Of a stretch of 64,000 nucleotides of DNA, positions 1 through 60,443 are shown in pieces. Positions within the stretch are counted from its first letter, which is position 1. The number at the start of each line of letters is the position of its first letter. Under the pieces are notes generated by a model that was not told the origin of the DNA, made no database searches, and saw only the letters and a list, made by a program, of their open reading frames with translations. The stretch comes from Ranitomeya imitator (lineage: Eukaryota): contig NC_091289.1 of assembly GCF_032444005.1 (NCBI RefSeq), positions 128,402,001 to 128,466,000 on the forward strand, in the 5' to 3' direction. Both the position numbers and the translations under genes were made by a program.

Positions 1-3000
1 TTCTGTCATGTGCTGCTGCCATTCTGCGCCCCCGTTCTGTCATGTGCTGCTGCCATCCTGCGCCCCCGTTCTGTCATATGCTGCTCCCATCCTGCGCCCC
101 TGTTCTGTAATGTGCTGCTCCCATCCTGCGCCCGTTCTGTCAGGTGCTGCTGCCATCCTGCGCCCCCGTTCTGTCATGTGCTGCTCCCATCCTGCGCCCG
201 TTCTGTCATGTGCTGCTACCATCCTGTGCCCCCGTTCTGTCATGTGATGCTCCCATCTTGCGCCCCCATTCTGTCATGTGCTGCTCCCATCCTGCGCCCC
301 TGTTCTGTCATGTGCTGCTCCCATCCTGCGCTCCTGTTCTGTCATGTGCTGCTCCCATCCTGCGCCCATTCTGTCATGTGCTGCTGCCATCCTGCGCCCC
401 CGTTCTGTCATGTGCTGCTCCCTTCCTGCGCCCCCGTTCTGTCATGTGCTGCTGCCATCCTGCTCCCCCGTTCTGTCATGTGCTGCTCCCATCCTGCGCC
501 CCTGTTCTGTCATGTGCTGCTCCCATCCTGCGCCCGTTCTGTCATGTGCTGCTGCCATCCTGTGCCCCCGTTCTGTCATGTGCTGCTTTCATCTTGCGCC
601 CCCATTCTGTCATGTGCTGCTCCCATCCTGCGCCCCTGTTCTGTCATGTGCTGCCCCCATCTTGCGCCCCCATTCTGTCATGTGCTGCTGCCATCCTGCG
701 CCCCCGTTCTGTCATGTGCTGCTACCATCCTGCGCCCGTTCTGTCATGTGCTGCTGCCATCCTGCGCCCATTCTGTCATGTGCTGCTCCCATCCTGCGCC
801 CCGTTCTGTCATGTGCTGCTACCATCCTGCGCCCGTTCTGTCATGTGCTGCTGCCATCCTGCGCCCATTCTGTCATGTGCTGCTCCCATCCTGCGCCCGT
901 TTTGTCATGTGCTGCTCCCATCCTGCGCCCGTTTTGTCATGTGCTGCTGCCATCGTGTGCCCGTTCTGTCATGTGCTTTTCCCATCCTGCGCCCCTGTTC
1001 TGTAATGTGCTGCTCCCATCCTGCGCCCGTTCTGTCATGTGCTGCTGCCATCCTGCGCCCCCGTTCTGTCATGTGCTGCTCCCATCCTGCGCCCGTTCTG
1101 TCATGTGCTGCTACCATCCTGTGCCCCCGTTCTGTCATGTGATGCTCCCATCTTGCGCCCCCATTCTGTCATGTGCTGCTCCCATCCTGCGCCCCTGTTC
1201 TGTCATGTGCTGCTCCCATCCTGCGCTCCTGTTCTGTCATGTGCTGCTCCCATCCTGCGCCCATTCTGTCATGTGCTGCTGCCATCCTGCGCCCCCGTTC
1301 TCTCATGTGCTGCTCCCTTCCTGCGCCCCCGTTCTGTCATGTGCTGCTGCCATCCTGCTCCCCCGTTCTGTCATGTGCTGCTCCCATCCTGCGCCCCTGT
1401 TCTGTCATGTGCTGCTCCCATCCTGCGCCCATTCTGTCATGTGCTGCTGCCATCCTGTGCCCCCGTTCTGTCATGTGCTGCTTTCATCTTGCGCCCCCAT
1501 TCTGTCATGTGCTGCTCCCATCCTGCGCCCCTGTTCTGTCATGTGCTGCCCCCATCTTGCGCCCCCATTCTGTCATGTGCTGCTGCCATCCTGCGCCCCC
1601 GTTCTGTCATGTGCTGCTACCATCCTGCGCCCGTTCTGTCATGTGCTGCTGCCATCCTGCGCCCATTCTGTCATGTGCTGCTCCCATCCTGCGCCCCGTT
1701 CTGTCATGTGCTGCTACCATCCTGCGCCCGTTCTGTCATGTGCTGCTGCCATCCTGCGCCCATTCTGTCATGTGCTGCTCCCATCCTGCGCCCGTTTTGT
1801 CATGTGCTGCTCCCATCCTGCGCCCGTTTTGTCATGTGCTGCTGCCATCGTGTGCCCGTTCTGTCATGTGCTTTTCCCATCCTGCGCCCCCGTTCTGTCA
1901 TGTGCTGCTCCCATCCTGTGCCCCCGTTCTTTCATGTGCTGCTCCCATCCTGCGCCCCTGTTCTGTCATGTGCTGCTCCCATCCTGCGCCCGTTCTGTCA
2001 TGTGCTGCTGCCATCCTGCGCCCCCGTTCTGTCATGTGCTGCTGCCATCCTGCGCCCCCGTTCTGTCATATGCTGCTCCCATCCTGCGCCCCTGTTCTGT
2101 AATGTGCTGCTCCCATCCTGCGCCCGTTCTGTCATGTGCTGCTGCCATCCTGCGCCCCCGTTCTGTCATGTGCTGCTCCCATCCTGCGCCCGTTCTGTCA
2201 TGTGCTGCTACCATCCTGTGCCCCCGTTCTGTCATGTGATGCTCCCATCTTGCGCCCCCATTCTGTCATGTGCTGCTCCCATCCTGCGCCCCTGTTCTGT
2301 CATGTGCTGCTCCCATCCTGCGCTCCTGTTCTGTCATGTGCTGCTCCCATGCTGCGCCCATTCTGTCATGTGCTGCTGCCATCCTGCGCCCCCGTTCTGT
2401 CATGTGCTGCTCCCTTCCTGCGCCCCCGTTCTGTCATGTGCTGCTGCCATCCTGCTCCCCCGTTCTGTCATGTGCTGCTCCCATCCTGCGCCCCCGTTCT
2501 GTCATGTGCTGCTCCCTTCCTGCGCCCCCGTTCTGTCATGTGCTGCTGCCATCCTGCTCCCCCGTTCTGTCATGTGCTGCTCCCATCCTGCGCCCCTGTT
2601 CTGTCATGTGCTGCTCCCATCCTGCGCCCGTTCTGTCATGTGCTGCTGCCATTCTGTGCCCCCGTTCTGTCATGTGCTGCTATCATCTTGCGCCCCCATT
2701 CTGTCATGTGCTGCTCCCATCCTGCGCCCCTGTTCTGTCATGTGCTGCCCCCATCTTACGCCCCCATTCTGTCATGTGCTGCTGCCATCCTGCGCCCCCA
2801 TTCTGTCATGTGCTGCTCCCATCCTGCGCCCCTGTTCTGTCATGTGCTGCCCCCATCTTACGCCCCCATTCTGTCATGTGCTGCTACCATCCTGCGCCCG
2901 TTCTGTCATGTGCTGCTGCCATCCTGCGCCCATTCTGTCATGTGCTGCTCCCATCCTGCGCCCCCGTTCTGTCATGTGCTGCTACCATCCTGCGCCCGTT

Positions 3001-3128
3001 CTGTCATGTGCTGCTGCCATCCTGCGCCCATTCTGTCATGTGCTGCTGCCATCCTGCGCCCGTTCTGTCATGTGCTGCTGCCATCCTGCGCCCCCGTTCT
3101 GTCATGTGCTGCTCCCATCCTGCGCCAC
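1..3128 (+). repeat. Minisatellite, ~32-34 bp unit (TTCTGTCATGTGCTGCTCCCATCCTGCGCCCC(G/T)), with higher-order blocks
   Basis: The unit is reiterated from base 1. The rare variant GTGATGCTCCC recurs at 244, 1139 and 2236 (spacing 895 and 1097 bp). The long Cys/Pro/Leu ORFs are by-products of a stop-free unit. Confidence 0.97.
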
Positions 3129-8475: not shown

Positions 8476-10116
8476 CAGTTAGGTCCATATATATTTGGAC
8501 AGAGACAACATTTTTCTAATTTAGGTTATAGACATTACCCCAATGAAATTTAAACAAAACAATTCAGATGCAGTTGAAGTTCAGACTTTCAGCTTTCATT
8601 TGAGGGTATCCACATTAAAATTAGATGAAGGGTTTGGGAGTTTCAGCTCCTTAACATGTGCCATACTGTTTTTAAAGGGACCAAAAGTAATTGGACAATT
8701 GATTCCAAGGCTATTTCATGGACACGTGTGGGCACTGCCTTTATTATTTCATTCTCAATTAAGCAGATAAAAGGCCTGGAGTTGATTTGAGGTGTGGTGC
8801 TTGCATTTGGAAGGTTTTGCTGTGAAGTAAACATGAGGTCAAAGGAGCTCTCCATGCAGGTGAAACAAGCCATCCTTAAGCTGCAAAAACAGAAAAAACC
8901 CATCCGAGAAATTGCTACAATATTAGGAGTGACAAAATCTACAGTTTGGTACATCCTGAGAAAGAAAGAAAGCACTGGTGAACTCATCAATGCAAAAAGA
9001 CCTGGGCGCCACGGAAGACAACAGTGGTGGATGATCGCAGAATAATCTCCATGGTGAAAAGAAACCCCTTCACAACAGCCAACCAAGTGACCAACACTCT
9101 CCAGGAGGTCGGCGTATCAATATCCAAATCTACCATAAAGAGAAGACTGCATGAAAGTAAATACAGAGGGTTCACTGCACGGTGCAAGCCACTCATAAGC
9201 ATCAAGAATAAAAAGGCTAGACTGGACTTTGCTAAAAAACATCTAAAAAAGCCAGCACAGTTCTGGAAGAACATTCTTTGGACAGATGAAACCAAGATCA
9301 ACCTTTACCAGAATGATGGAAAGAGAAAAGTATGGCGAAGGTGTGGTACAGCTCATGATCCAAAGCATACCACATCATCTGTAAAACACGGCGGAGGCAG
9401 TGTGATGGCTTGGGCATGCATGGCTGCCGGTGGCACTGGGTCACTAGTGTTTATTGATGATGTGACACAGGACAGAAGCAGCTGAATGAATTCTGAGGTA
9501 TTCAGAGCCATACTGTGTGCTCAGATCCAGCCAAATGCAGCCAAACTGACTGGTTTCACACTACAGATGGACAATGACCCAAAACATAAAGCCAAAGCAA
9601 CCCAGGAGTTTATCAAAGCAAAGAAGTGGAATTTTCTTGAATGGCCAAGTCAGTCACCTGATCTCACCCCAATTGAGCATGCATTTCACTTGTTAAAGAC
9701 TAAACTTCAGAGAGAAAGGCCCACAAACAAACAGCAACTGAAAACCACCGCAGTGAAGGCATGGCAGATCATCAAAAAGGAGGAAACACAGCATCTGGTG
9801 ATGTCCATGAGTTCAAGACTTCAGGCAGTCATTGCCAACAAAGGGTTTTCAACTAAGTACTAGAAATGAACATTTTATTTAAAATTATTGAATCTGTCCA
9901 ATTACTTTTGGTCCCTTTTAAAACAGGGTGGCACATGTTAAGGAGCTGAAACTCCTAAACCCGTCATTCAATTTTAATTTGGATACCCTCAAATGAAAGC
10001 TAAAAGTCTAAACTTCAACTGCATCTGAATTGTTTTGTTTAAAACTCATTGTGGTGATGTCTATAACCAAAATTAGAAAAATGTTGTCTCTGTCCAAATA
10101 TATATGGACCTAACTG
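8476..10116 (+). mobile_element. Full-length Tc1 transposon (1641 bp), defective
   Basis: Long TIRs (CAGTTAGGTCCATATATATTTGGACAGAGAC... and its reverse complement, ~235 bp), TA TSD, internal transposase. Confidence 0.96.
8833..9863 (+). pseudogene. Tc1 DD34E transposase pseudogene
   Basis: MRSKELS... start; WTDETK, QMDNDPKH and [12 protein letters not shown] motifs. Frameshift near 9010-9025 and in-frame TGA at 9483-9485. Confidence 0.95.
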
Positions 10117-17942: not shown

Positions 17943-20153
17943 TATATATATATATATATGTTAGTGAGGCACATATATATATATAAATTAATATTTCATC
18001 CAGCGCGAGATAGCTTAAAAGCCGGTAATTCAATTGCCGGCTTTTGCTATCTCTTTCAAAAACCCGACATGATTTGAGACATGGTTTACATACAGTAAAC
18101 CATCTCATATCCCCCTTTTTTTGCATATTCCACACTACTAATGTTAGTAGTGTGTATGTGCAAAATTTGGCCGTTCTAGCTAGTAAAATAAGGGGTTAAA
18201 TGGCAGAAAAAATTGGCGTGGGCTTCCGTGCAATTTTCTCCGCCAGAGTAGTAAAGCCAGTGACTGAGGGCAGATATCAATAGCCTGGAGAGGGTCCATG
18301 GTTATTGCCAATCCCCCCCCCCCCCCTGGCTGGTTAATTTTTTTTACAGCCAGGAGCTCTGCTATAATGCAGCTATGCTCGTACCTGTAAAACCCCAGCG
18401 AATGAATGGAAACTAGGTCAATGACCTATAGTTACCTTCATTCGCGGTGAGGTGCCCTCTGCTGGATGTCCTTCCAGCGTGGGTAAAAATGCAGAAAAGT
18501 TCCCAGGCTCGAGTTCATATGAGGACAACCAGCAGAGGGCGCCTCACCGCGAATGAAGGTAACTACAGGTCATTGACCTAGTTTCCATTCATTCGCTGGG
18601 GTTTTACAGCTACGAGCATAGCTGCATTATAGCAGAGCTCCTGGCTGTAAAAAAAATTAACCCCTTCAGATGGATTTACAACGTGGGACGTTACAGATCC
18701 TCGGAAGGTATGTATATTGTTGGTTTATTATTTTTTCTTTGTCACAGAGCGAGGGTCTTCAGCCAGTGGATTGAGCGTACAATAAAATATTACAACAAAC
18801 GGTGTGTTTATTTCATTTAATTACTTTTTAATAATGTGTGTGTGTTTTTTTTAACTCTTTCATACAATTGGATTAATAATGGATAGGTGTCATAATTGAC
18901 GCCTCTCCATTATTAATCTGGCTTAATGTCACCTTACAATAGCAAGGTGGCATTAACCCTTCATTACCCCATATCCCACCGCTACACGAGAATGGGAAGA
19001 GAGTGGCCAAGTGCCAGAATAGGCGCATCTTCCAGATGTGCCTTTTCTGGGGTGGCTGGGGGCAGATGTTTTTAGCCAGGGGGGGGGCAAAAACCATGGA
19101 CCCTCTCCAGGCTATTAATATCTGCCCTCAGTCACTGGCTTTACTACTCTGGCAGAGAAAATTGCGCGGGAGCCCAAGCCAATTTTTTCCGCCATTTAAC
19201 CCTTTAATTTAATAGCTAGAACGGCCAAATTTTGCACATACACACTACTAACATTAGTAGTGTGGAATATGCAAAAAAAAAGGGGGATATTATACAGTAA
19301 GGGGGATACAGTAAACCATGTGTCAAATCATGTCGGGTTTAGGAAGGAGATAGCAAAAGCCGGCAATTGAATTACCGGCTTTTAAGCTATATAGCGCTGG
19401 ATGAAATATTAATATATATACATATATGTGTCTCAATGACATATATATATATACCTTTTCTATGTGTACACATTTATTCTACCTATTCTACTGTAAGCTG
19501 TCAGTGTGATTTTACTGTACACCGCACTGAATTGCCGGCTTTTCTCTCTAACAGCGCTGCGTATTTCTCGCAAGTTACACTGCTGGTCCGTGTGTAATCC
19601 GTATTTTTCAGGCCCCCATAGACTTGCATTGGCGATTTTTTTGCGCAATGCGGTGACAAACGCAGCATGCTGCGATTTTCTACGGCCGTAGAAAGCCGTA
19701 TAATACGGATCAGTAAAATACGGCAGATAGGAGCTGGGGCATAGAGAATAATTGGGCCGTGTGTAATGCGTGTTTTACGGACTTATTTAATACGCTCATA
19801 CATCTGTAAAACTCGCTAGTGTGACGCCGGCCTAAGAGGTAATATTTCTCCTGGCGGAGAGTGACATACTGGCTCTGGCATGCCAAGGTAAGGAGGCTTA
19901 TTTGCCATGCAATGCTCCTCTGGGAAATTTAATATGCAAATTCTCTCTTCAGAGAGAAAGAGGATTTGAGCTCTATATAGCGCCCGCTGCTGGAAGTAGT
20001 CATCCTACAAGTCATTATTGACCATTTAACAAGCTTTGAAATGTGACTTGCACGGCGAGTCAGCCTCCTTACCTTGGCATGCCAGAGCCAGTATGTCACT
20101 CTCCACAAGGAGAAACATTACCACTTAGACCTCATTAGTTTGGAGGAACTTAC
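17631..20153. mobile_element. Diverged relative of the 28.5-29.3 kb ribozyme-bearing monomer, fold-back form, split by a Harbinger insertion
   Basis: 19845-20050 aligns by eye to the reverse complement of 28790-28960 (CAATGCTCCTCTGGGAAAT...TATGCAAATT.TCTCTTCAGAGAG). Arms 17631-17656 plus 19836-19897 and 20060-20153 are inverted. No hammerhead core remains. Confidence 0.75.
17657..19832 (+). mobile_element. PIF/Harbinger-like non-autonomous element (2176 bp)
   Basis: TIR GGCCGGCGTCACACT / AGTGTGACGCCGGCC with TAA TSD. Internal long inverted repeats at ~17955-18310 / ~19085-19450. Confidence 0.9.
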
Positions 20154-27777: not shown

Positions 27778-28642
27778 CATCTCTTAAATAATATGCGTAA
27801 CATAAAATCCTATTTTATACACGATGACGCATTCCCTTTAAATGTATATGCTACCATAATATCTGGTAACTCCATCAGAAGATTCTGCACTGTGTATCGA
27901 TATTTTTTATGTATATATTCAACAGTTATTCTTAGAGGTGGTAGCTACCAGTTTGTTAATTATATTAAAAGGTCAGAGCTTTCGTTAAGCCGATAAATTG
28001 ATTTCATTTATACGGTGTGTATACTTCTGTGAATGCCAGGCACAACTAATGCATGTGTAACATACAGAACATTGTGAAAATTGTGCTATGTTTTGTCATC
28101 AGATTAATGGGAATATACTAAGACTCAGAGGTATACTCTACTGCATTCATAAGGACATGGGAAACAAAAGTCTGTAAATGTCCATTTATTTCTGTCGGAT
28201 AGTTTCCTAGGCATGATCTGTGATCTGTGCAGAGGTCACTATGCAGGGACAGAGGAAGAGGTGAGCAGTGATATCACTTCAAAAGAATCTGTCAGCAGGT
28301 TTTTGCTGTGTAATCTGAGAAATATTCAACAAATATATGCCTACTAGTGCCATCTCAAACAATTCTCTCAAGATATGCAGTATGCAACTTGGCAGAATAG
28401 AAACATTCTATAAAATATATCTTTTAATAAATCATTTTAATAAATCCCAAAATAAACACACCTGTAGATAACGTCCATAGATAATAAAACTTTAAATGCA
28501 GGTATGCAAATTGTCTCTTCAGGGAGGAAGAGGACTAGAACTCTAGTGCCACCTATTGGAAGTAGCGATCTTAACAGTCAATGTCGACTCTTTAACGAGC
28601 CTTGTCACATGACTTAGGATAATAGCCAAACCAGAACCTCAA

Positions 28643-28687
28643 TTTGCAGACACTGTGTTTCGGGGTACTGCCCCTCGTCAGTGCAAA
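28643..28687 (-). ncRNA. Type I hammerhead ribozyme
   Basis: The minus strand reads TTTGCA-CTGACGA-GGGG CAGTA CCCC-GAAAC ACAGT GTC-TGCAAA. All core nucleotides and stems I, II and short III are present. Confidence 0.9.
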
Positions 28688-29017
28688 GTGGAGATCTGGT
28701 TTGGCTGATTGAGAGGGGCAGTACCCCGAAACACAGTGTCTGCAAATTGAGATTCTGGTTTGGCTATTATCCTAAGTCATGTGACAAGTCTCGATAAAGA
28801 GTCGACATTGACTGTTAGGATAGCTACTTCCAATAGGTGGCACTAGAGTTCTAGTCCTCTTCCTCTCTGAAGAGACAATTTGCATATTTCCCAGAGGAGC
28901 ATTGCGGCTTTAAGTCTCCTCGCCTCGACGTGCTTATCATGTCACTCTCCGCAAAGAGAAACAATACTTCTTGGATCCCGGTCAGACACCTCTCAATCAG
29001 CCAAACCAGATCTCCAC

Positions 29018-29062
29018 TTTGCACTGACGAGGGGCAGTACCCCGAAACACAGTGTCTGCAAA
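29018..29062 (+). ncRNA. Type I hammerhead ribozyme
   Basis: TTTGCA-CTGACGA-GGGG CAGTA CCCC-GAAAC ACAGT GTC-TGCAAA, identical to the minus-strand copy. Predicted cleavage after C29056. Confidence 0.92.
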
Positions 29063-29692
29063 TTGAGATTATGGTTTGGCTATTATCCTAAACTATGCTA
29101 AGTCATGTGACAAGGCTCGTTAAAGAGTCAACATTGACTGTTAGGATTGCTACTTCCAATAGGTGGCACTAGAGTTCTAATCCTGTTCCTCTCTGAAGAG
29201 ACAATTTGCATATTTCCCAGAGGAGCATTGCGGGTTTAAGTCTCCTCACCTTGACATGCTTATCATGTCACTCTCCGCAAGGAGAAACAATACTTCTTAA
29301 ATGCAGGTATCAAACACTTATCGCATAGGTTCTAAACATGAACAAATATGTTAAGTAATAATTGTATTAGATCTCACCCAGTTGAGATGTGGAGATGTAA
29401 TCATCCTCAGAGCTCCATTGGAAACTTGAGATAAGTAGACGGGTTATCTAACATCGTTGTGCTCCATGCATTAGCTCCCACCCGAACAAGAACAGCAACC
29501 AAGTGTCATACTGATGATTTAGGCCTCTAATGGAAAAATGTTCTTGCCCAACAGGTTTCTACCATAGTTACATGGCGTCATCAGGGTAGTGTATATGTGG
29601 GGTAAGTATGCAATTTGGTGCAGTAGATCAAAGTCTCTCAGAGCACATAATCCAAAAATGCACCAGTTAGAGGGTCCTATAGTGGTAGATAT

Positions 29693-29882
29693 TAGTGATG
29701 AGCGAGTGTGTTCGTTATTCGGGTTTTCCGAGCATGCTCGGGTATTCTCTGAGTATTCTGGGCGTGCTCGGAGTTTATGTTTGAGTTGACTCAAACATAA
29801 TCTTCGAGCATGCCCAAGAAACTCGGAGAACACCTGAGCATGCTCGGAAAACCGAAATAACGAGCACACTCGCTCACCACTA
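29693..29882. mobile_element. hAT MITE, near-perfect palindrome
   Basis: TAGTGATGAGCGAGTGTG / CACACTCGCTCACCACTA termini; degenerate 8-bp flanks GTAGATAT/ATAGGTAC. Confidence 0.75.
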
Positions 29883-29889
29883 ATAGGTA

Positions 29890-30130: not shown

Positions 30131-30644
30131 TCACCAGAGAGGTTCCACTACCATCTAGAGGAACGTAAGCACAAACAACATCTAGGGATCTCCAGGATAT
30201 TAAACCAAATAAAGCATCTTGGGTGAAAGAACTGAGCGAAGGGACAAACAGACAGATATCTCATCAAAGATACAAAACGACCAAGTATTGAGGCATCCAC
30301 TAGACCCCAAAGGGGAACATCATTTCTTTAGCCGAAAACTACCCCCTCTGGAGTCGCAATACACAAATGAAGGATAAGTATCCAGGTTAGGGTGCGAGCC
30401 AATGCCTGGAGAACGACGGAGTTAGATAGCCCATCTGCTTATCACAAGATTTCCATGTGGCTCCTTTGACATCTATTCTTCATGTCTGAACTGGGTGAGT
30501 TCTAATACAATTATTACTTATTTTGACATGTTCATGTTTAGATACAATAGGTGTTTCATACCTACATTTAAGTTTGTATTATCTATGGATGGTATATAGA
30601 GGTGTGTTTTTTATCTCGATCTCCCTTCGATTTGAAACGATTTA

Positions 30645-30991
30645 GGCTATGTGCACACGTTCCGGATTATTTGTGATTTTACGCATTTTTCGGTGGTATT
30701 ACGTGGCAAAAATGCATAAAAAACGCATACATTATGCATCCCATCATTTCCAATTAATTCCGCAATTTTTGTGCACATGTTGCGGATTTTTCCGCAAAAA
30801 AACCCACTATGTTATTGAATTGGGAAGCTCCGGAAAAAAACGTGAAAAATCCGCCCAACATCCGCGCAAAAAACGCGACAAAACCGCAAATAAAATGCGA
30901 GAAAACGCGTGCGGATTTTATGCGGAAAATCTCCGGTTTTGCTCAGGACGTTTCCGCATAAAAAAAAAAATCCTGACGTGTGCACATAGCC
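30645..30991. mobile_element. PIF/Harbinger MITE
   Basis: TIR GGCTATGTGCACACGT / ACGTGTGCACATAGCC, TTA TSD. Confidence 0.93.
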
Positions 30992-40692: not shown

Positions 40693-40836
40693 NNNNNNNN
40701 NNNNNNNNNNNNNNNNNNNNNNNNNNNNNNNNNNNNNNNNNNNNNNNNNNNNNNNNNNNNNNNNNNNNNNNNNNNNNNNNNNNNNNNNNNNNNNNNNNNN
40801 NNNNNNNNNNNNNNNNNNNNNNNNNNNNNNNNNNNN
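40693..40836. other. Assembly gap (N run)
   Basis: 144 Ns. Confidence 1.
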
Positions 40837-41625: not shown

Positions 41626-43231
41626 TAGTGGGGCAAAAAAGTATTTAGTCAGTCAGCAATAGTGCAAGTTCCACCACTTAAAAAGATGAGAGGCGTCTGT
41701 AATTTACATCATAGGTAGACCTCAACTATGGGAGACAAACTGAGAAAAAAAAATCCAGAAAATCACATTGTCTGTTTTTTTAACAATTTATTTGCATATT
41801 ATGGTGGAAAATAAGTATTTGGTCATAAACAAAATTTCATCTCAATACTTTGTAATATATCCTTTGTTGGCAATGACAGAGGTCAAACGTTTTCTGTAAG
41901 TCTTCACAAGGTTGCCACACACTGTTGTTGGTATGTTGGCCCATTCCTCCATGCAGATCTCCTCTAGAGCAGTGATGTTTTTGGCTTTTCGCTTGGCAGC
42001 ACGGACTTTCAACTCCCTCCAAAGGTTTTCTATAGGGTTGAGATCTGGAGACTGGCTAGGCCACTCCAGGACCTTGAAATGCTTCTTACGAAGCCACTCC
42101 TTCGTTGCCCTGGTGGTGTGCTTTGGATCATTGTCATGTTGAAAGACCCAGCCACGTTTCATCTTCAATGCCCTTGCTGATGGAAGGAGGTTTGCACTCA
42201 AAATCTCACGATACATGGCCCCATTCATTCTTTCATGTACCCGCATCAGTCGTCCTGGCCCCTTTGCAGAGAAACAGCCCCAAAGCATGATGTTTCCACC
42301 ACCATGCTTTACAGTAGGTATGGTGTTTGATGGATGCAACTCAGTATTCTTTTTCCTCCAAACACGACAAGTTGTGTTTCTACCAAACAGTTCCAGTTTG
42401 GTTTCATCAGACCATAGGACATTCTCCCAAAACTCCTCTGGATCATCCAAATGCTCTCTAGCAAACTTCAGACGGACCTGGACATGTACTGGCTTAAGCA
42501 GTGGGACACGTCTGGCACTGCAGGATCTGAGTCCATGGTGGCGTAGTGTGTTACTTATGGTAGGCCTTGTTACATTGGTCCCAGCTCTCTGCAGGTCATT
42601 CACTAGGTCCCCCCGCGTGGTTCTGGGATTTTTGCTCACCGTTCTTGTGATCATTCTGACCCCACGGGGTGGGATTTTGCGTGGAGCCCCAGATCGAGGG
42701 AGATTATCAGTGGTCTTGTATGTCTTCCATTTTCTAATTATTGCTCCCACTGTTGATTTCTTCACTCCAAGCTGGTTGGCTATTGCAGATTCAGTCTTCC
42801 CAGCCTGGTGCAGGGCTACAATTTTGTTTCTGGTGTCCTTTGACAGCTCTTTGGTCTTCACCATAGTGGAGTTTGGAGTCAGACTGTTTGAGGGTATGCA
42901 CAGGTGTCTTTTTATACTGATAACAAGTTTAAACAGGTGCCATTACTACAGGTAATGAGTGGAGGAAAGAGGAGACTCTTAAAGAAGAAGTTACAGGTCT
43001 GTGAGAGCCAGAAATCTTGATTGTTTGTTTCTGACCAAATACTTATTTTCCACCATAATATGCAAATAAATTGTTAAAAAAACAGACAATGTGATTTTCT
43101 GGATTTTTTTTTCTCAGTTTGTCTCCCATAGTTGAGGTCTACCTATGATGTAAATTACAGACGCCTCTCATCTTTTTAAGTGGTGGAACTTGCACTATTG
43201 CTGACTGACTAAATACTTTTTTGCCCCACTG
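41626..43231 (-). mobile_element. Full-length Tc1 transposon, copy 1 (1606 bp)
   Basis: ~205-bp IR/DR-type TIRs ((C/T)AGTGGGGCAAAAAAGTATTTAGTCAG), TA TSD. One terminal C is mutated to T. Confidence 0.97.
41842..42864 (-). CDS. Intact Tc1 DD34E transposase, 340 aa
   Basis: Uninterrupted ORF with paired-like N-terminus, GAPRK linker, [14 protein letters not shown] and SPDLNPIE; 34 residues between the second D and E. Confidence 0.97.
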
Positions 43232-49797: not shown

Positions 49798-50101
49798 CAG
49801 TGATGAGCGAGTATACTCGTTGCTCCGGTTTTCCCTAGCACGCTCGGGTGGTCTCCGAGCATTTGTGACTGCTCGGAGATTAAGTTTTTATTGATGCAGC
49901 TGCATGATTTACAGCCACTAGCCAGCCTGAGTACATGTGGGGGTTGCCTGGTTGCTAGGGAATCCCCACATGTAATCAAGCTGTCAAGTAACAGTAAGTC
50001 ATACAGCTGGAAAACTAAATCTCTGAGCACTCACAAATACTCGGAGACCACCTGAGCGTGCTTGGGAAAACCTGAGCAATGAGTATACTCGCTCATCACT
50101 A
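49798..50101. mobile_element. hAT MITE (304 bp)
   Basis: (C/T)AGTGATGAGCGAGTATACTC TIRs; perfect 8-bp TSD CTAATGAC. Confidence 0.93.
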
Positions 50102-51522
50102 CTAATGACCCTCGGGTTCTGCTCTGCGCTGAGCGTGAACTGAGTGTCATGCGTCTGTGCTCCAATCCTCTTGCATGACAGGATCGGAGCACAGCTGTGA
50201 AGGAGACAGAGAAATTAATTTCTCCACGTCCTCCACTGTTGGCATATATCGCATCGCACTCAGATGATATCCATATTGTACGGTAGTGTGACTCTGGCCT
50301 TTGAGTTACATGTAAATATGCTTATGTTGGTGCTTGGGCTCTATCTGCCTTTTTCGTCTCCATTCATTTGTATATGCTCTGTTTAGCAAAACTAATGGAT
50401 GTATGTTTTTCAGATAGTGGAGAGTTTCTCCTGTAAGATTCAATGTCAATTTTAAAATTTTACATTATCAGCAACATTTTTAATATAAACCTATATGACT
50501 AGGTACCCCTTTGAATCATTTTTTAATATCTTCCACATACAAAAAGTCTGAGGAGTAAAAAATCTTAGCAATCAGTCCTAGAATTTGCTTTTACAACTCT
50601 TATATTGCCCTATGCATTTCCATGGTAGCAGACAACAAGCAAACCCTGTGTAGTCTGATCGATTAATTAGAGTATGAGGGCAGAATGAGACTATCTGTCG
50701 CCAACTTCTTTAAAAAATATCAAATTAGCTTTATCATAGAGGGCAGATGAACAGAAGCATCAGAGTACATAGGGTTTGCTTGCTGTCATCTACCACAATA
50801 ACTACTACAGCAATCAACATTTATATTGAGCTGTACCCAAAAGAAACTCAGAGGTCCAGATTCATTCAGACTGGTGTTTCGTATGCCAGTCTTAATGAGG
50901 GACATACAGGAATAAGATGCACCAAATTCATTAAGACGTGCATGTCACTTAATGAATTTTGAGCATCTTAACAGTGGCATGCACCTTTGTGCATCTCACT
51001 AGATATGTTACTCTAGTCAAGGGCTTTGTCGGATGAACCCCATCCTATCCAGGCTCCTCCCCAGCACCACCCTTCATGACCTTGGATGTACCCAATACGT
51101 CATGGTTGGTAAGTACTTACCAACCTTGAACATACTGGGTTTGTCATGGCTAAAATTCGCACCGCGACCGCACTTAAGGTGATTGTATTAAGGTGCCTGC
51201 TTTTGCCCCAGGGGGTTTTGACACCCCCTTCTACTACAATTGCTGTGATTGCCTGTTCAGTTCTGAACAGTTAATCACAGTGCTTTCACTGACGGGTTGT
51301 AACAGCACCGATCATAGGCTGGAGACTAGCACGCCGACGTCACCAGGGCCAGCTGTGATTGGTGTGTTCGGAGGATGACGCTGATTGCACGAATCAGAGT
51401 GCACAAAGGCAATCTGACCTTAGTATGACTGCTGTTTTGTCTCGCTGTGCTGGGTGTTGTCATGCCACAGACTTTTTAAGCCTGTGCCATCACTGCTGCT
51501 TGTTTTCCTGTGATTCTTGAAA

Positions 51523-53764: not shown

Positions 53765-55370
53765 CAGTGGGGCAAAAAAGTATTTAGTCAGTCAGCAATA
53801 GTGCAAGTTCCACCACTTAAAAAGATGAGAGGCGTCTGTAATTTACATCATAGGTAGACCTCAACTATGGGAGACAAACTGAGAAAAAAAAATCCAGAAA
53901 ATCACATTGTCTGTTTTTTTATCATTTTATTTGCATATTATGGTGGAAAATAAGTATTTGGTCAGAAAAAAAATTTCATCTCAATACTTTGTAATATATC
54001 CTTTGTTGGCAATGACAGAGGTCAAACGTTTTCTGTAAGTCTTCACAAGGTTGCCACACACTGTTGTTGGTATGTTGGCCCATTCCTCCATGCAGATCTC
54101 CTCTAGAGCAGTGATGTTTTTGGCTTTTCGCTTGGCAACACGGACTTTCAACTCCCTCCAAAGGTTTTCTATAGGGTTGAGATCTGGAGACTGGCTAGGC
54201 CACTCCAGGACCTTGAAATGCTTCTTACGAAGCCACTCCTTCGTTGCCCTGGCGGTGTGCTTTGGATCATTGTCACGTTGAAAGACCCAGCCACGTTTCA
54301 TCTTCAATACCCTTGCTGATGGAAGGAGGTTTGCACTCAAAATCTCACGATACATGGCCCCATTCATTCTTTCATGTACCCGGATCAGTCGTCCCGGCCC
54401 CTTAGCGGAGAAACAGCCCCAAAGCATGATGTTTCCACCACCATGCTTTACAGTAGGTATGGTGTTTGAAGGATGCAACTCAGTATTCTTTTTCCTCCAA
54501 ACACGACAAGTTGTGTTTCTACCAAACAGTTCCAGTTTGGTTTCATCAGACCATAGGACATTCTCCCAAAACTCCTCTGGATCATCCAAATGCTCTCTAG
54601 CAAACTTCAGATGGGCCCGGACATGTACTGGCTTAAGCAGTGGGACACGTCTGGCACAACAGGATCTGAGTCCATGGTGGCGTAGTGTGTTACTTATGGT
54701 AGGCCTTGTTACATTGGTCCCAGCTCTCTGCAGTTCATTCACTAGGTCCCCCCGCTTGGTTCTGGGATTTTTGCTCACCGTTCTTGTGATCATTCTGACC
54801 CCACGGGGTGGGATTTTGCGTGGAGCCCCAGATCGAGGGAGATTATCAGTGGTCTTGTATGTCTTCCATTTTCTAATTATTGCTCCCACTGTTGATTTCT
54901 TCACTCCAAGCTGGTTGGCTATTGCAGATTCAGTCTTCCCAGCCTGGTGCAGGGCTACAATTTTGTTTCTGGTGTCCTTTGACAGCTCTTTGGTCTTCAC
55001 CATAGTGGAGTTTGGAGTCAGACTGTTTGAGGGTGTGCACAGGTATCTTTTTATACTGATAACAAGTTTAAACAGGTGCCATTACTACAGGTAATGAGTG
55101 GAGGAAAGAGGAGACTCTTAAAGAAGAAGTTACAGGTCTGTGAGAGCCAGAAATCTTGATTGTTTGTTTCTGACCAAATATTTATTTTCCACCATAATAT
55201 GCAAAAAAAATGATAAAAAAACAGACAATGTGATTTTCTGGATTTTTTTTTCTCAGTTTGTCTCCCATAGTTGAGGTCTACCTATGATGTAAATTACAGA
55301 CGCCTCTCATCTTTTTAAGTGGTGGAACTTGCACTATTGCTGACTGACTAAATACTTTTTTGCCCCACTG
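53765..55370 (-). mobile_element. Full-length Tc1 transposon, copy 2 (1606 bp)
   Basis: Intact CAGTGGGGC...GCCCCACTG TIRs, inserted in a (TA)n tract. Confidence 0.97.
53981..55003 (-). CDS. Intact Tc1 DD34E transposase, 340 aa
   Basis: Uninterrupted ORF with the catalytic triad retained. Confidence 0.97.
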
Positions 55371-55394
55371 TATATATATATATATATATATATA

Positions 55395-56998
55395 CAGTAC
55401 AGACCAAAAGTTTGGACATACCTTCTGATTTAAAGATTTTTCTGTATTTTCATGATTATGAAAATTGTAAATTCACACTGAAGGCATCAAAACTATGAAT
55501 TAACACATGTGGAATTATATACTTAACAAAAAAGTGTGAAACAACTGAAAATATGTCTTATATTTTAGGTTCTTCAAAATAGCCACCTTTTGCTTTGATG
55601 ACTGCTTTTCACACTCTTGGCATTCTCTTGATGAGCTTCAAGAGGTAGTCACCGGGAATAGTTTTCACTTCACAGGTGTGCCCTGTCAGGTTTAATAAGT
55701 GGGATTTATTGCCTTATAAATGGTGTTGGGACCATCAGTTTTGTTGCGCAGAAGTCTGGTGGATGCACAGCTGATAGTCCTACTGAATATACTGTTAGAA
55801 TTTGTATTATGGCAAGAAAAAATCAGCTAAGTAAAGAAAAACGAGTGACCATCATTACTTTAAGAAATGAAGGTCAGTCAGTCCGAAAAATTGGGAAAAC
55901 TTTGAAAGTGTCCCCAAGTGCAGTTGCAAAAACCATCGAGCACTACAAAGAAACTGGCTCACATGAGGCCCACCCCAGGAAAGGAAGACCAAGAGTCACC
56001 TCTGCTTCTGAGGATAAGTTTATCCAAGTCACCAGCCTCAGAAATCGCAGATTAACAGCAGCTCAGATTAGAGACCAGGTCAATGCCACACAGAGTTCTA
56101 GCAGCAGACACTTCTCTACAACAACTGTTCAGAGGAGACTTTGTGCAGCCTTCATAGTAAAATAGCTGCTAGTAAACCACTGCTAAGGAAAGGCAACAAG
56201 CAGAAGAGACTTGTTTGGGCTAAAGAACACAAGGAATGGACATTAGACCAGTGGAAATCTGTGCTTTGGTCTGATGAGTCCAAATTTGAGATCTTTGGTT
56301 CCAACCACCATGTCTTTGTGCGACACAGAAAAGGTGAACGGATGGACTTTACATGCCTGGTTCCCACCGTGAATCATGGAGGAAGAGGTGTGATGGTGTG
56401 GGGGTGCTTTGCTGGTGACACTGTTGGGGATTTAATCAAAATTGAAGACATACTGAACCAGCATGGCTACCGCAGCATCTTGCAGATGCATGCTATTTTG
56501 TCCATTTTGCGTTTAGTTGGAACATCATTTATTTTTTAACAGGACAATGACCCCAAACACACCTCCTGGCTGTGTAAGGGCTATTTGACCAAGAAGGAGA
56601 GTGATGGGGTGCTACACCAGGTGACCTGGCCTCCACAGTCACCAGACCTGAACCCAATCGAGATGGTTTGGGGTGAGTTGGACCACAGAGTGAAGGCAAA
56701 AGGCCAACAAGTGCTAAGCATCTCTGGGAACTCCTTCAAGATTGTTGGAAGGCTATTCCCGGTGACTACCTCTTGAAGTTCATCAAGAGAATGCCAAAAG
56801 TGTGCAAAGCAGTCATCAAAGCAAAAGGTGGCTACTTTGAAGAACCTAGAATATAAGACATATTTTCAGTTGTTTCACACTTTGTTAAGTATATAATTCC
56901 ACATGTGTTAATTCATAGTTTTGATGCCTTCAGTGTGAATTTACAATTTTCATAGTCATGACAATACAGAAAAATCTTTAAATGAGAAGGTGTGTCCA
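55395..56998 (+). mobile_element. Tc1 transposon of a different family, defective; right TIR runs into the gap
   Basis: TIR CAGTACAGACCAAAAGTTTGGACA; the matching right TIR ends ...GGTGTGTCCA at the N run. Confidence 0.92.
55809..56856 (+). pseudogene. Frameshifted Tc1 transposase
   Basis: MARKNQLSKEKR...[29 protein letters not shown] and AKGGYFEE spread over several frames. Confidence 0.93.
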
Positions 56999-57126
56999 NN
57001 NNNNNNNNNNNNNNNNNNNNNNNNNNNNNNNNNNNNNNNNNNNNNNNNNNNNNNNNNNNNNNNNNNNNNNNNNNNNNNNNNNNNNNNNNNNNNNNNNNNN
57101 NNNNNNNNNNNNNNNNNNNNNNNNNN
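56999..57126. other. Assembly gap (N run)
   Basis: 128 Ns. Confidence 1.
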
Positions 57127-58836: not shown

Positions 58837-60443
58837 CAGTGGGGCAAAAAAGTATTTAGTCAGTCAGCAATAGTGCAAGTTCCACCACTTAAAAAGATGA
58901 GAGGCGTCTGTAATTTACATCATAGGTAGACCTCAACTATGGGAGACAAACTGAGAAAAAAAAATCCAGAAAATCACATTGTCTGTTTTTTTTAACATTT
59001 TATTTGCATATTATGGTGGAAAATAAGTATTTGGTCAGAAACAAAATTTCATCTCAATACTTTGTAATATATCCTTTGTTGGCAATGACAGAGGTCAAAC
59101 GTTTTCTGTAAGTCTTCACAAGGTTGCCACACACTGTTGTTGGTATGTTGGCCCATTCCTCCATGCAGATCTCCTCTAGAGCAGTGATGTTTTTGGCTTT
59201 TCGCTTGGCAACACGGACTTTCAACTCCCTCCAAAGGTTTTCTATAGAGTTGAGGTCTGGAGACTGGCTAGGCCACTCCAGGACCTTGAAATGCTTCTTA
59301 CAAAGCCACTCCTTCGTTGCCCTGGCGGTGTGCTTTGGATCATTGTCATGTTGAAAGACCCAGCCATGTTTCATCTTCAATGCCCTTGCTGATGGAAGGA
59401 GGTTTGCACTCAAAATCTCACGATACATGGCCCCATTCATTCTTTCATGTACCCGGAGCAGTCGTCCTGGCCCCTTTGCAGAGAAACAGCCCCAAAGCAA
59501 GATGTTTCCACCACCATGCTTTACAGTAGGTATGGTGTTTGATGGATGCAACTCCGTATTCTTTTTCCTCCAAACACGACAAGTTGTGTTTCTACCAAAC
59601 AGTTCCAGTTTGGTTTCATCAGACCATAGGACATTCTCCCAAAACTCCTCTGGATCATCCAAATGCTCTCTAGCAAACTTCAGATGGGCCCGGACATGTA
59701 CTGGCTTAAGCAGTGGGACATGTCTGGCACTGCAGGATCTGAGTCCACGGTGGCGTAGTGTGTTACTTATGGTAGGCCTTGTTACATTGGTCCCAGCTCT
59801 CTGCAGTTCATTCACTAGGTCCCCCCGCGTGGTTCTGGGATTTTTGCTCACCGTTCTTGTGATCATTCTGACCCCACGGGGTGGGATTTTGCGTGGAGCC
59901 CCAGATCGAGGGAGATTATCAGTGGTCCTGTATGTCTTCCATTTTCTAATTATTGCTCCCACTGTTGATTTCTTCACTCCAAGCTGGTTGGCTATTGCAG
60001 ATTCAGTCTTCCCAGCCTGGTGCAGGGCTACAATTTTGTTTCTGGTGTCCTTTGACAGCTCTTTGGTCTTCACCATAGTGGAGTTTGGAGTCAGACTGTT
60101 TGAGGGTGTGCACAGGTGTCTTTTTATACTGATAACAAGTTTAAGCAGGTGCCATTACTACAGGTAATGAGTGGAGGAAAGAGGAGACTCTTAAAGAAGA
60201 AGTTACAGGTCTGTGAGAGCCAGAAATCTTGATTGTTTGTTTCTGACCAAATACTTATTTTCCACCATAATATGCAAATAAAATGTTAAAAAAACAGACA
60301 ATGTGATTTTCTGGATTTTTTTTTCTCAGTTTGTCTCCCATAGTTGAGGTCTACCTATGATGTAAATTACAGACACCTCTCATCTTTTTAAGTGGTGGAA
60401 CTTGCACTATTGCTGACTGACTAAATACTTTTTTGCCCCACTG
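58837..60443 (-). mobile_element. Full-length Tc1 transposon, copy 3 (1607 bp)
   Basis: Intact TIRs, TA TSD. Confidence 0.97.
59054..60076 (-). CDS. Intact Tc1 DD34E transposase, 340 aa
   Basis: Uninterrupted ORF; triad retained (SPDLNSIE variant). Confidence 0.97.

What the first reader, a model, noticed from the sequence alone, without database searches (positions are those of the whole stretch)
28492..29310. Retrozyme-like element: ~316-nt non-coding monomer with two perfect hammerhead ribozymes, 5' inversion and 14-bp TSD
Seen: two identical canonical type I hammerheads (stem I TTTGCA/TGCAAA, CTGACGA, stem II GGGG/CCCC, GAAAC, very short stem III, GTC site), one per strand. A third copy at 28712-28746 has lost its core at the inversion junction. 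Equivalent cleavage sites are 316 nt apart, and the whole structure is bounded by TTAAATGCAGGTAT on both sides. Established: newt satellite-2, schistosome SMalpha and metazoan non-LTR retrozymes are 150-400-nt hammerhead monomers whose transcripts self-cleave and can circularise. Inference: a cDNA longer than one unit, plus a long TSD, a twin-priming-like inversion and no poly(A), points to rolling-circle or multimer reverse transcription by a borrowed LINE/Penelope RT. This may be an undescribed amphibian retrozyme family.
Basis: partly seen in the sequence, partly recalled or inferred. Interest (0 to 1): 0.9.

Follow-up and report, generated by a model that had tools for sequence, protein, structure and literature searches.

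The report
Frog hammerhead retrozyme insertion, Penelope-style
This is one real, fairly young insertion of a small non-coding "retrozyme" repeat carrying self-cleaving hammerhead ribozyme motifs, laid down in the tandem-plus-inverted pattern typical of Penelope-like retrotransposons; the kind is already documented in amphibians, so it is a clean example rather than a discovery.

Summary
Two identical type I hammerhead motifs (29018-29062 +, 28643-28687 -) lie in a 791-bp non-coding insert (28506-29296). The insert is 1.8 head-to-tail units of 316 nt, preceded by a 211-nt inverted, 5'-truncated copy. It has no poly(A) and is bounded by a perfect 14-bp duplication.

A diverged paralogue of the host repeat (30386-30645, minus strand) runs unbroken across the insertion point and carries the target once. 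This confirms a true insertion with a target-site duplication.

The hammerhead has every core nucleotide. Its helix III is too weak to form in a monomer; a domain-swapped double hammerhead is predicted to be about 10 kcal/mol better, as reported for newt and axolotl ribozymes. Rfam RF00163 aligns full length but scores below its gathering threshold.

Partial tandem, adjacent head-to-head inverted copy, short duplication and an AT-rich target together form the published hallmark of Penelope-like element (PLE) integration. A purified PLE protein has been shown to cleave and extend both target strands.

A second, older copy (19829-20131) also has two inverted arms, both ending near the same unit position.

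Non-LTR retrozymes are reported in every amphibian sampled, with a mean consensus of 316 bp. This is a new member of a known kind. Whether the family is catalogued could not be checked.

The parts
28492..28505 (.). Left copy of the 14-bp target-site duplication TTAAATGCAGGTAT. Its last 3 nt (TAT) could equally derive from the element (microhomology).
   Evidence: paralogous unfilled site.
28506..28716 (-). Inverted, 5'-truncated copy: reverse complement of unit positions 249-316 followed by 1-146. Interpreted as cDNA primed from the top strand of the target.
   Evidence: (I1-I3). Identity to the full unit is 100% over unit 249-316 and 95.9% over 1-146.
28643..28687 (-). Complete type I hammerhead motif on the minus strand. 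Predicted cleavage is between 28649 and 28648 (minus-strand numbering).
28713..28716 (.). Head-to-head junction: 4-nt overlap GAGG shared by the inverted and the direct copies (microhomology join of two cDNA ends).
   Evidence: I3 arm ends at 28716; D2 starts at 28713.
28713..28740 (+). Truncated hammerhead remnant (unit 289-316). Stem II, GAAA, helix III and the GTC site are present; CTGACGA and the stem I 5' strand are missing.
   Evidence: identical to 29029-29056.
28741..29056 (+). One full 316-nt unit, from cleavage site to cleavage site. Non-coding, 46.5% G+C.
28999..29081 (+). Hammerhead domain with a long, interrupted helix I: 25-nt arms, with an internal loop CAC/UU six pairs from the core. 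The core motif is 29018-29062; predicted cleavage is after C29056.
   Evidence: (I6).
29057..29296 (+). Partial second unit (unit 1 to about 230-232) with a 10-nt insertion at about 29088-29097. It ends in ...GAGAAACAATACTTCTT with no poly(A). Interpreted as the start of the bottom-strand-primed cDNA.
29297..29310 (.). Right copy of the 14-bp target-site duplication. Its first 2 nt (TT) could equally derive from the element.
30386..30645 (-). Paralogue of the host repeat that serves as an unfilled site. It is contiguous across the insertion point, with one copy of the target (TTAAATGTAGGTAT, 30558-30571).
19829..20049 (-). Older, diverged copy of the same family (about 72% identity), long arm: unit positions 34 to about 237-247. 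No hammerhead part.
20048..20131 (+). Short inverted arm of the older copy: unit positions about 163-237, joined head to head to the long arm. Both arms end in the same region of the unit.
   Evidence: (I1: 84 nt, 89%).

Best explanation
The 791 bp between the two TTAAATGCAGGTAT copies are one retrotransposition product of a non-autonomous, hammerhead-bearing retroposon. This is a metazoan 'non-LTR retrozyme' with a 316-nt unit, most likely copied in by the reverse transcriptase/GIY-YIG endonuclease of a Penelope-like element (PLE).

Proposed steps:
1. (Inferred) A master array elsewhere is transcribed into multimeric RNA. Hammerheads acting in pairs cut it into units, which may be ligated into circles.
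2. (Inferred from the footprint) The PLE enzyme makes nicks 14 bp apart in an AT-rich target inside an older repeat.
3. (Read from the junctions) The bottom-strand 3' end (...TTTAA) pairs with UU at unit 231-232. It primes a cDNA that runs 1.8 units, crossing two ribozyme cleavage sites. The template was therefore an uncleaved multimer or a circle.
4. (Read from the junctions) The top-strand 3' end (...GGTAT) pairs with AUA at unit 144-146. It primes a second cDNA of 211 nt that crosses one cleavage site.
5. (Read from the junction) The two cDNA 3' ends, ...CCTC and ...GAGG, anneal over 4 nt. This gives the head-to-head inverted arrangement, and fill-in gives the 14-bp duplication.

The daughter copy has only one complete ribozyme per strand, so it is probably not a source of new copies. 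If transcribed, it would form a hairpin with 174-nt arms.
For: Real insertion with target duplication:
- The 14-mer sits exactly at both ends.
- A paralogous unfilled site runs across the junction.

Retrozyme features:
- The 316-nt unit is head to tail with nothing between units.
- There is no ORF over 73 aa and no Pfam match at or above a gathering cut-off.
- G+C is 46.5%.
- Each complete unit carries a canonical type I hammerhead with all core nucleotides.

Dimer-type ribozyme:
- With the core held unpaired, the monomer forms no helix III (-31.3 kcal/mol) and loses to an inactive fold (-34.8).
- Two copies give a domain-swapped double hammerhead with intermolecular ACAC/GUGU pairs at -73.0. 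That is 10.4 kcal/mol better than two monomers.
- This matches the dimer requirement reported for newt and axolotl (PMC7229834).

PLE signature in the literature:
- Partial tandems plus an adjacent inverted 5'-truncated copy (PMC8557442).
- Direct plus inverted pLTRs with 8-10-bp duplications and an overlap at the inverted junction; the pLTR alone suffices in trans (PMC3846280).
- A purified PLE protein cuts and extends both strands, prefers AT-rich DNA, and starts reverse transcription internally at the same site for both strands (PMC11167929).

Second insertion:
- The older copy has two inverted arms that both end at unit 235-247, next to the young copy's 3' end at 230-232. Three of four termini therefore cluster.
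- All of them are far from the ribozyme-made RNA end at position 316, which implies internal initiation.

Background:
- Retrozymes are phylogenetically tied to PLE pLTRs in Xenopus and co-occur with PLEs in vertebrates (bioRxiv 10.64898/2026.07.22.740005).
- Penelope elements are annotated across anuran genomes (PMC12822217).
Against: - No PLE reverse transcriptase or endonuclease was found among the 33 ORFs of the window that I scanned.
- I could not show sequence homology between this unit and any PLE pLTR. The resemblance of unit 208-244 to the PAc start region (22 of 32 nt by eye) is not significant: 85 of 2000 shuffles score as high, and other places in the window score higher.
- The 30-40-bp PLE 'tail' was not seen.
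- The young copy's inverted arm starts at unit 143-146, not at 230. The rule 'same start on both strands' therefore holds only for the older copy.
- The 2-3-nt microhomologies at the primer junctions are also what LINE-type target-primed reverse transcription gives.
- The Rfam hammerhead score is below threshold.
- No covariation test is possible, because all three ribozyme copies are identical.
- Only two insertions could be examined. No further family members could be fetched.
Confidence: 0.72

Rival explanations
1. The same retrozyme RNA was copied in by a LINE (L1-like or CR1/L2/RTE-like) through classical twin priming, not by a Penelope-like element.
For: - Twin priming by L1 gives a 5' inversion with microhomology at the junction and duplications of 7-20 bp (established knowledge: Ostertag and Kazazian 2001, recalled, not read here).
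- The junctions here show 2-4 nt of microhomology.
- The target CTT|TAAAT is T/A-rich.
- PMC7229834 leaves LINEs open as possible mobilisers.
Against: - There is no poly(A) or microsatellite tail.
- The insert is longer than one unit, in tandem.
- A second, independent insertion shows both arms starting in the same unit region. PLEs do this in vitro, whereas L1 twin priming starts its second cDNA at arbitrary internal sites.
Confidence: 0.15
2. A DNA-level event. A piece of a hammerhead satellite array, possibly as extrachromosomal circular DNA or through replication template switching, was inserted and partly inverted, with no RNA intermediate.
For: - Hammerhead repeats also exist as long satellite-like arrays that expand by unequal crossover.
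- Fold-back inversions with microhomology can arise from replication errors (general knowledge).
Against: - A precise 14-bp duplication of a target that is single in the paralogue is the footprint of staggered nicks and fill-in.
- The insert's 3' end coincides with the termini of an independent older copy. This argues for a defined initiation site rather than random breakage.
Confidence: 0.06
3. A non-autonomous DNA transposon (MITE) that happens to contain hammerhead-like strings.
For: - A large inverted repeat is present inside the element.
- The surrounding window is rich in Tc1/mariner elements.
Against: - The element's two termini are not inverted copies of each other: the left end is unit 146 in reverse and the right end is unit 230.
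- A 14-bp duplication is not that of Tc1/mariner, which duplicates TA (general knowledge).
- The inverted arm is a truncated copy of the same tandem unit, not a terminal repeat.
Confidence: 0.02

Closest known systems
Amphibian non-LTR retrozymes / newt satellite 2 and axolotl Rtz331, Rtz353 (Epstein and Gall 1987; Cervera and de la Pena 2020, PMC7229834)
   Same: - Non-coding head-to-tail units of about 330 nt.
- A canonical type I hammerhead with a very weak helix III that is expected to work as a dimer.
- G+C below 50%.
- A duplication longer than 4 bp.
- No LTR, PBS or PPT.
   Different: - The host is an anuran, probably a dendrobatid, not a salamander.
- This locus is a 1.8-unit dispersed daughter copy with an inverted 5' piece, not a long array.
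- Expression and circles are untested.
Xenopus and other vertebrate non-LTR retrozymes derived from PLE pLTRs (Li, Clavereau and Pollet 2026, bioRxiv 10.64898/2026.07.22.740005)
   Same: - Same class of element.
- The mean amphibian consensus length is 316 bp, the same as the unit here.
- Dispersed monomers and dimers are found outside genes.
- PLEs are the proposed mobilisers.
   Different: - By that study's criterion (two consecutive units with complete hammerheads) this locus is not an 'active' copy.
- The study as read does not describe insertion footprints (inverted 5' copy, duplication, microhomologies), which this locus shows clearly.
Penelope-like element insertions (Penelope/Poseidon/Neptune; PMC8557442, PMC3846280, PMC11167929)
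   Same: - Partial tandem.
- An adjacent head-to-head inverted 5'-truncated copy with a short overlap.
- A short duplication in AT-rich DNA.
- A hammerhead in the repeated part.
- A cDNA start that is internal to the RNA.
   Different: - No RT/GIY-YIG ORF between the repeats.
- The hammerhead is the canonical form with a long helix I, not the minimal variant reported for autonomous PLEs.
- No 30-40-bp tail was recognised.
- Homology to a pLTR is not shown.
L1 twin-priming inversions
   Same: A 5' inverted segment, microhomology at the junctions, and a duplication in the 7-20-bp range.
   Different: No poly(A); the insert is multimeric; a second copy shows both arms starting at the same place.
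Plant LTR retrozymes (PMC4918200)
   Same: Non-autonomous hammerhead-bearing retroelements with circular RNA intermediates.
   Different: The plant elements have type III hammerheads, LTRs, PBS/PPT and 4-bp duplications, and are mobilised by Gypsy elements. None of these applies here.

Membership tests
Hammerhead ribozyme, type I (Rfam RF00163) | Conserved core nucleotides: C3-U4-G5-A6-N7-G8-A9, G12-A13-A14, the A15.1-U16.1 pair, and H17 at the cleavage site | tested here: met
   CUGACGA ... GAAA ... GUC are all present in both complete copies.
Hammerhead ribozyme, type I (Rfam RF00163) | Three helices around the core, with helix I open-ended | tested here: met
   - Helix I: UUUGCA/UGCAAA, extended to 25-nt arms.
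- Helix II: GGGG/CCCC with loop CAGUA.
- Helix III: only 2-3 pairs in the monomer, but 4+4 intermolecular pairs in the dimer.
Hammerhead ribozyme, type I (Rfam RF00163) | Score at or above Rfam's gathering threshold (34 bits) | tested here: not met
   No hit at gathering score or in the 1.8-kb E<=10 search. A 101-nt search gives 25.5 bits, full length 1-45/45, E=1.1e-4.
Hammerhead ribozyme, type I (Rfam RF00163) | Compensatory changes supporting the helices | tested here: inconclusive
   The three ribozyme-region copies are identical, the older copy lacks this region, and no other copies could be fetched.
Hammerhead ribozyme, type I (Rfam RF00163) | Self-cleavage | not testable with these tools
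   Needs in vitro transcription of monomer and dimer constructs.
Metazoan non-LTR retrozyme | Small (about 170-400 nt) non-coding unit repeated head to tail, each unit with a type I hammerhead | tested here: met
   316-nt unit, 1.8 copies; longest ORF 73 aa, with no Pfam match at or above a gathering cut-off.
Metazoan non-LTR retrozyme | No LTR/PBS/PPT; G+C below 50%; duplication longer than 4 bp when present | tested here: met
   No terminal direct repeats other than the unit itself; 46.5% G+C; 14-bp duplication.
Metazoan non-LTR retrozyme | [quoted passage not shown] 2026) | tested here: not met
   There is one complete motif per strand; the upstream plus-strand copy is truncated at the inversion junction.
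Metazoan non-LTR retrozyme | Expressed as unit-length linear and circular RNA | not testable with these tools
   No transcriptome access.
Insertion made by a Penelope-like element | Partial tandem with an adjacent inverted 5'-truncated copy, head to head | tested here: met
   The older copy is also head to head.
Insertion made by a Penelope-like element | Short variable duplication in AT-rich target DNA | tested here: met
   14 bp, with target ...AATAAAACTTTAAATGCAGGTAT.... Published examples are 8-10 bp.
Insertion made by a Penelope-like element | Defined internal start of reverse transcription, the same for both strands | tested here: inconclusive
   Three of four termini fall at unit 230-247; the fourth is at 143-146. 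Only two insertions were available.
Insertion made by a Penelope-like element | Optional 30-40-bp 'tail' at one end | tested here: inconclusive
   None was recognised, but this needs many copies to define.
Insertion made by a Penelope-like element | Unit homologous to the pLTR of an autonomous PLE in the same genome | not testable with these tools
   No Repbase, Dfam or host genome access. The comparison with the published PAc template is not significant. No RT was found in 33 ORFs of the window.
L1-type twin-priming insertion | 3' poly(A) tail | tested here: not met
   The element ends ...AACAATACTTCTT directly at the duplication.
MITE / DNA transposon | Terminal inverted repeats at the two ends | tested here: not met
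   The left terminus is unit 146 (reversed) and the right terminus is unit 230; they are not complementary.

The most novel reading that the evidence does not exclude
These two insertions may be natural footprints showing how retrozyme RNA is copied. Reverse transcription would start at sequence-defined internal sites and from both strands of the target, as the Anolis PLE enzyme does in vitro.

In the young copy, both cDNA start points lie 8-11 nt downstream of the only two ACAAT pentamers in the unit. Each pentamer sits in an AGAGA(n)CAAT context, at unit 131-139 and 215-225. In the older copy, both arms start in the second of these regions.

A corollary concerns the truncated upstream ribozyme copy. 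In the domain-swapped double hammerhead, the intact downstream core would cut the truncated copy's site. Even this 'dead' locus could then release a 316-nt RNA.
Probability: 0.3. Interest if true: 0.5.

Novelty: new member of a known kind. Interest (0 to 1): 0.3.

Why it matters
The locus is a tidy, fully resolved example of a retrozyme insertion. It has a confirmed target duplication, an unfilled paralogous site, and all three junctions readable to the nucleotide.

Published work on animal retrozymes rests mostly on arrays, expression data and phylogeny. Insertion footprints that tie them to the odd two-strand priming of Penelope-like elements are scarce. A genome-wide census of such footprints in this frog could test whether retrozymes really use the PLE machinery, and whether the template is a circle or a multimer.

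As a single locus it changes nothing fundamental. Hammerhead retrozymes, their dimer-type ribozymes and their PLE link are already described in amphibians.

Tried and rejected
- Rfam at gathering score over the whole window, and at E<=10 over 1.8 kb, gave no hammerhead. The mir-624 and mir-5681 'hits' only reflect the inverted-repeat hairpin. A 101-nt search recovered RF00163 below threshold.
- More family copies were sought in several ways, all without result:
  - two metagenome scans, with the ribozyme core and with the conserved 3' motif;
  - one scan of prokaryotic genomes;
  - an exact look-up of a window transposase;
  - three look-ups of Ranitomeya imitator proteins, which located contigs of GCA_958301615.1 but returned no DNA because the file is too large;
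  - an nhmmer profile of the family against the window, which found only the two known copies.
- Homology of the unit's 3' region to the published Anolis PAc start site looked good by eye (22 of 32 nt) but is not significant. It was dropped as evidence.
- A literature search for the ribozyme sequence string found nothing.
- The one held supplement of the 2026 preprint is an oligonucleotide order form and was of no use.
- A Pfam scan of 33 ORFs for a reverse transcriptase found none, only Tc1/mariner parts.
- The bacterial promoter/terminator scan is irrelevant for a vertebrate locus and was ignored.
- Circle versus multimer template:
  - The three copies differ in a star-like way over 146 nt: 2, 4 and 3 private changes, plus one site where all three differ.
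  - There is no change in 164 nt of ribozyme region, where about 3.7 changes would be expected (P about 0.02).
  - This hints at pre-existing variation from a selected source array, but it is too weak to decide.
- No duplication could be found for the older copy.
Full report
**What is there**

The 39-nt string CTGACGAGGGGCAGTACCCCGAAACACAGTGTCTGCAAA occurs exactly twice in the window, at 29024-29062 on the plus strand and 28643-28681 on the minus strand. It has no match in 100 shuffles.

A BLAST of the cleavage-to-cleavage unit (28741-29056, 316 nt) against the window gives the following anatomy:
- 28492-28505: target duplication.
- 28506-28716: reverse complement of unit positions 249-316 followed by 1-146.
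- 28713-28740: unit 289-316.
- 28741-29056: one full unit.
- 29057-29296: unit 1 to about 230-232, with a 10-nt insertion near 29088-29097.
- 29297-29310: target duplication.

TRF sees 28713-29298 as 1.8 copies. The element holds no ORF longer than 73 aa, and none of the three longest reaches a Pfam gathering cut-off. The unit is 46.5% G+C.

**Is it a real insertion?**

The 14-mer TTAAATGCAGGTAT sits exactly at both boundaries. A one-mismatch copy on the minus strand at 30558-30571 led to a stronger test.

I joined the left flank with one 14-mer to the right flank, reconstructing the empty site. It aligns without interruption across the junction to the reverse complement of about 30386-30645. 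BLAST gives 76% identity over 233 nt; the local alignment scores 238 against a maximum of 45 in 300 shuffles. The host sequence is therefore an older repeat with two inverted arms. One arm is unfilled and has the target once. The other received the 791-bp insert and has the target twice. This is as good as an empty-site test can be inside one window.

**The ribozyme**

All core nucleotides are present: CUGACGA, GAAA, the A15.1-U16.1 pair and C17.
- Helix II is GGGG/CCCC with loop CAGUA.
- Helix I is UUUGCA/UGCAAA. It continues, after an internal loop CAC/UU, into 25-nt arms.
- From my own knowledge of canonical type I hammerheads, an internal loop about six pairs from the core is where the loop that contacts loop 2 normally sits. 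This is therefore the canonical form, not the minimal form reported for autonomous PLEs.

A descriptor scan I wrote finds only these two motifs in 64 kb, and none in 30 shuffles.

Rfam is less kind. Nothing reaches gathering score, and nothing appears in a 1.8-kb search at E<=10. When only 101 nt are given, so that the filters are lax, RF00163 aligns over its full length at 25.5 bits (gathering score 34), E=1.1e-4.

Helix III is ACAC-A-GUGU, which cannot close as a hairpin:
- With the core held unpaired, the monomer forms no helix III (-31.3 kcal/mol) and loses to an inactive alternative fold (-34.8).
- Two copies form a domain-swapped double hammerhead with two intermolecular ACAC/GUGU blocks at -73.0. 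That is 10.4 kcal/mol better than two monomers and nearly equal to the unconstrained dimer optimum of -73.6.

This behaviour is reported for newt and axolotl ribozymes, which cleave poorly as monomers and well as dimers (PMC7229834). Activity itself is untested. There is no covariation evidence, because all three ribozyme-region copies are identical.

**How the insert was made**

The junctions can be read directly.
- Right end. The unit reads ...ACTTCTT|GGATCC and the insert reads ...ACTTCTT|AAATGC. The bottom-strand primer (...TTTAA-3') could therefore pair with UU at unit 231-232.
- Left end. The duplication ends ...GGTAT and the reversed unit continues GCAAATTG. The top-strand primer could therefore pair with AUA at unit 144-146.
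- Head-to-head junction. GAGG (28713-28716) belongs to both copies. This means the two cDNA 3' ends, ...CCTC and ...GAGG, annealed over 4 nt.

The long cDNA crosses two ribozyme cleavage sites and the short one crosses one. The template was therefore an uncleaved multimer or a circle. Its start at unit 230-232 is far from the RNA end that ribozyme cleavage would create (position 316). Initiation was therefore internal.

**A second insertion**

A 72%-identical older copy lies at 19829-20131. It consists of a 221-nt arm (unit 34 to about 237-247, minus strand) joined head to head to an 84-nt arm (unit about 163-237, plus strand).
- Both arms end in the same region of the unit, a few nucleotides from the young copy's 3' end.
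- It never contained the ribozyme part.
- I found no duplication for it.

**Which machinery?**

The literature read here describes exactly this architecture for Penelope-like elements:
- In Adineta vaga, direct plus inverted pLTRs are flanked by 8-10-bp duplications, the inverted and direct pLTRs overlap, and pLTRs alone can carry unrelated DNA in trans (PMC3846280).
- The purified Anolis PLE protein cleaves and extends both strands of an AT-rich target. It starts reverse transcription internally in an AC-rich stem-loop, with no difference in start site between the strands (PMC11167929).

The older copy fits the 'same start on both strands' rule. The young copy fits it on one strand only.

Animal retrozymes had already been proposed to depend on PLEs (PMC7229834). 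A 2026 preprint shows the link phylogenetically for Xenopus and reports retrozymes in all seven amphibians sampled, with a mean consensus of 316 bp. Penelope elements are annotated across anurans, including dendrobatids (PMC12822217).

Against the PLE reading:
- I found no RT in 33 ORFs of the window.
- There is no recognisable 'tail'.
- There is no significant similarity to the one PLE template sequence available to me.

A LINE partner is therefore kept as a rival at about 0.15. Its main weaknesses are the missing poly(A) and the paired termini of the older copy. DNA-level rearrangement and a MITE are unlikely, for the reasons given under the rival explanations.

**Leads that are not established**

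- The only two ACAAT pentamers of the unit start at positions 135 and 221. Both sit in an AGAGA(n)CAAT context, 8-11 nt upstream of the two cDNA start points of the young copy. With four termini in all, and a motif defined after the fact, this is a hint of sequence-directed initiation and no more.
- The three copies inside the young insert carry 2, 4 and 3 private changes in 146 nt, plus one site where all three differ. There are no changes in 164 nt of ribozyme region, where about 3.7 would be expected (P about 0.02). This mildly favours a multimeric template from a selected source array over a single circle. Several of the changes are CpG transitions, and the test is weak.
- If all differences arose after insertion, about 2-3% per copy at the 1-3 x 10^-9 per site per year quoted for anurans gives an age of roughly 7-30 million years at most.

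**Consequences for this locus**

Neither strand has two complete ribozymes, so the copy is not 'active' by the published criterion. In the domain-swapped dimer, however, the intact downstream core would act on the cleavage site of the truncated upstream copy. Release of a 316-nt RNA from this locus is therefore conceivable. This is an inference, and it is testable.

Read-through transcripts would fold into a hairpin with 174-nt arms. The predicted energy is -335.9 kcal/mol, z = -41. Such a hairpin is a plausible substrate for small-RNA pathways.

**Source organism**

The window has vertebrate-like composition (43% G+C, CpG observed/expected 0.51). It carries three intact 340-aa Tc1/Sleeping-Beauty-type transposase ORFs. 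Their best matches, at 95-97% identity, are proteins annotated in Ranitomeya imitator. A dendrobatid frog is therefore likely, but the species is not proven. The two N runs (40693-40836, 56999-57126) were left untouched.

**Verdict**

The element belongs to an already described class that is common in amphibians. I file it as a new member of a known kind, of modest interest, mainly as a clean footprint of the insertion mechanism.

Noticed in passing
window 1-3126: A 3.1-kb minisatellite: 93.9 copies of a 34-bp unit (TTCTGTCATGTGCTGCTCCCATCCTGCGCCCCCG), 89% matches, with higher-order periods of 134 and 168. It is the source of the long stop-free ORFs in several frames.
   Followed up: partly
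window 41842-42864, 53981-55003, 59054-60076 (all minus strand): Three intact 340-aa Tc1/Sleeping-Beauty-type transposase ORFs (HTH_SB, HTH_Tnp_Tc3_2, DDE_3). They differ from each other at 11-14 residues and are 95-97% identical to proteins annotated in Ranitomeya imitator. The family is possibly still active.
   Followed up: partly
window 28428-28505 + 29311-29490, and 30386-30645: The host of the retrozyme insertion is an older repeat with two inverted arms of about 260 bp (76% identical) some 0.9 kb apart. It looks like a non-autonomous DNA transposon with long terminal inverted repeats.
   Followed up: partly
window 29690-29885: A palindromic segment of about 196 bp (85.7% self-complementary) inside that host repeat. 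Related 90-nt inverted pieces lie at 49799-49887 and 50012-50104.
   Followed up: no
window 9024-9863 and 55809-56165: Degraded Tc1/mariner transposase fragments: HTH_Tnp_Tc3_2 and DDE_3 split over two ORFs, and a Sleeping-Beauty/paired-like HTH fragment.
   Followed up: no
window 28503-28886: The inverted and direct copies together make a hairpin with 174-nt arms, 97% complementary, and a 36-nt loop. Predicted energy as RNA is -335.9 kcal/mol. It explains the spurious sub-threshold microRNA-family hits in Rfam.
   Followed up: yes
window 40693-40836 and 56999-57126: Two runs of N (144 and 128 bases), left as they are.
   Followed up: no
window 28956-28970 versus 29029-29043: The 3'-terminal motif GAGAAACAATACTTC resembles the ribozyme's helix II region GAGGGGCAGTACCCC with G-to-A and C-to-T changes; MAFFT even aligned them. 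This may be chance or an old internal duplication.
   Followed up: no
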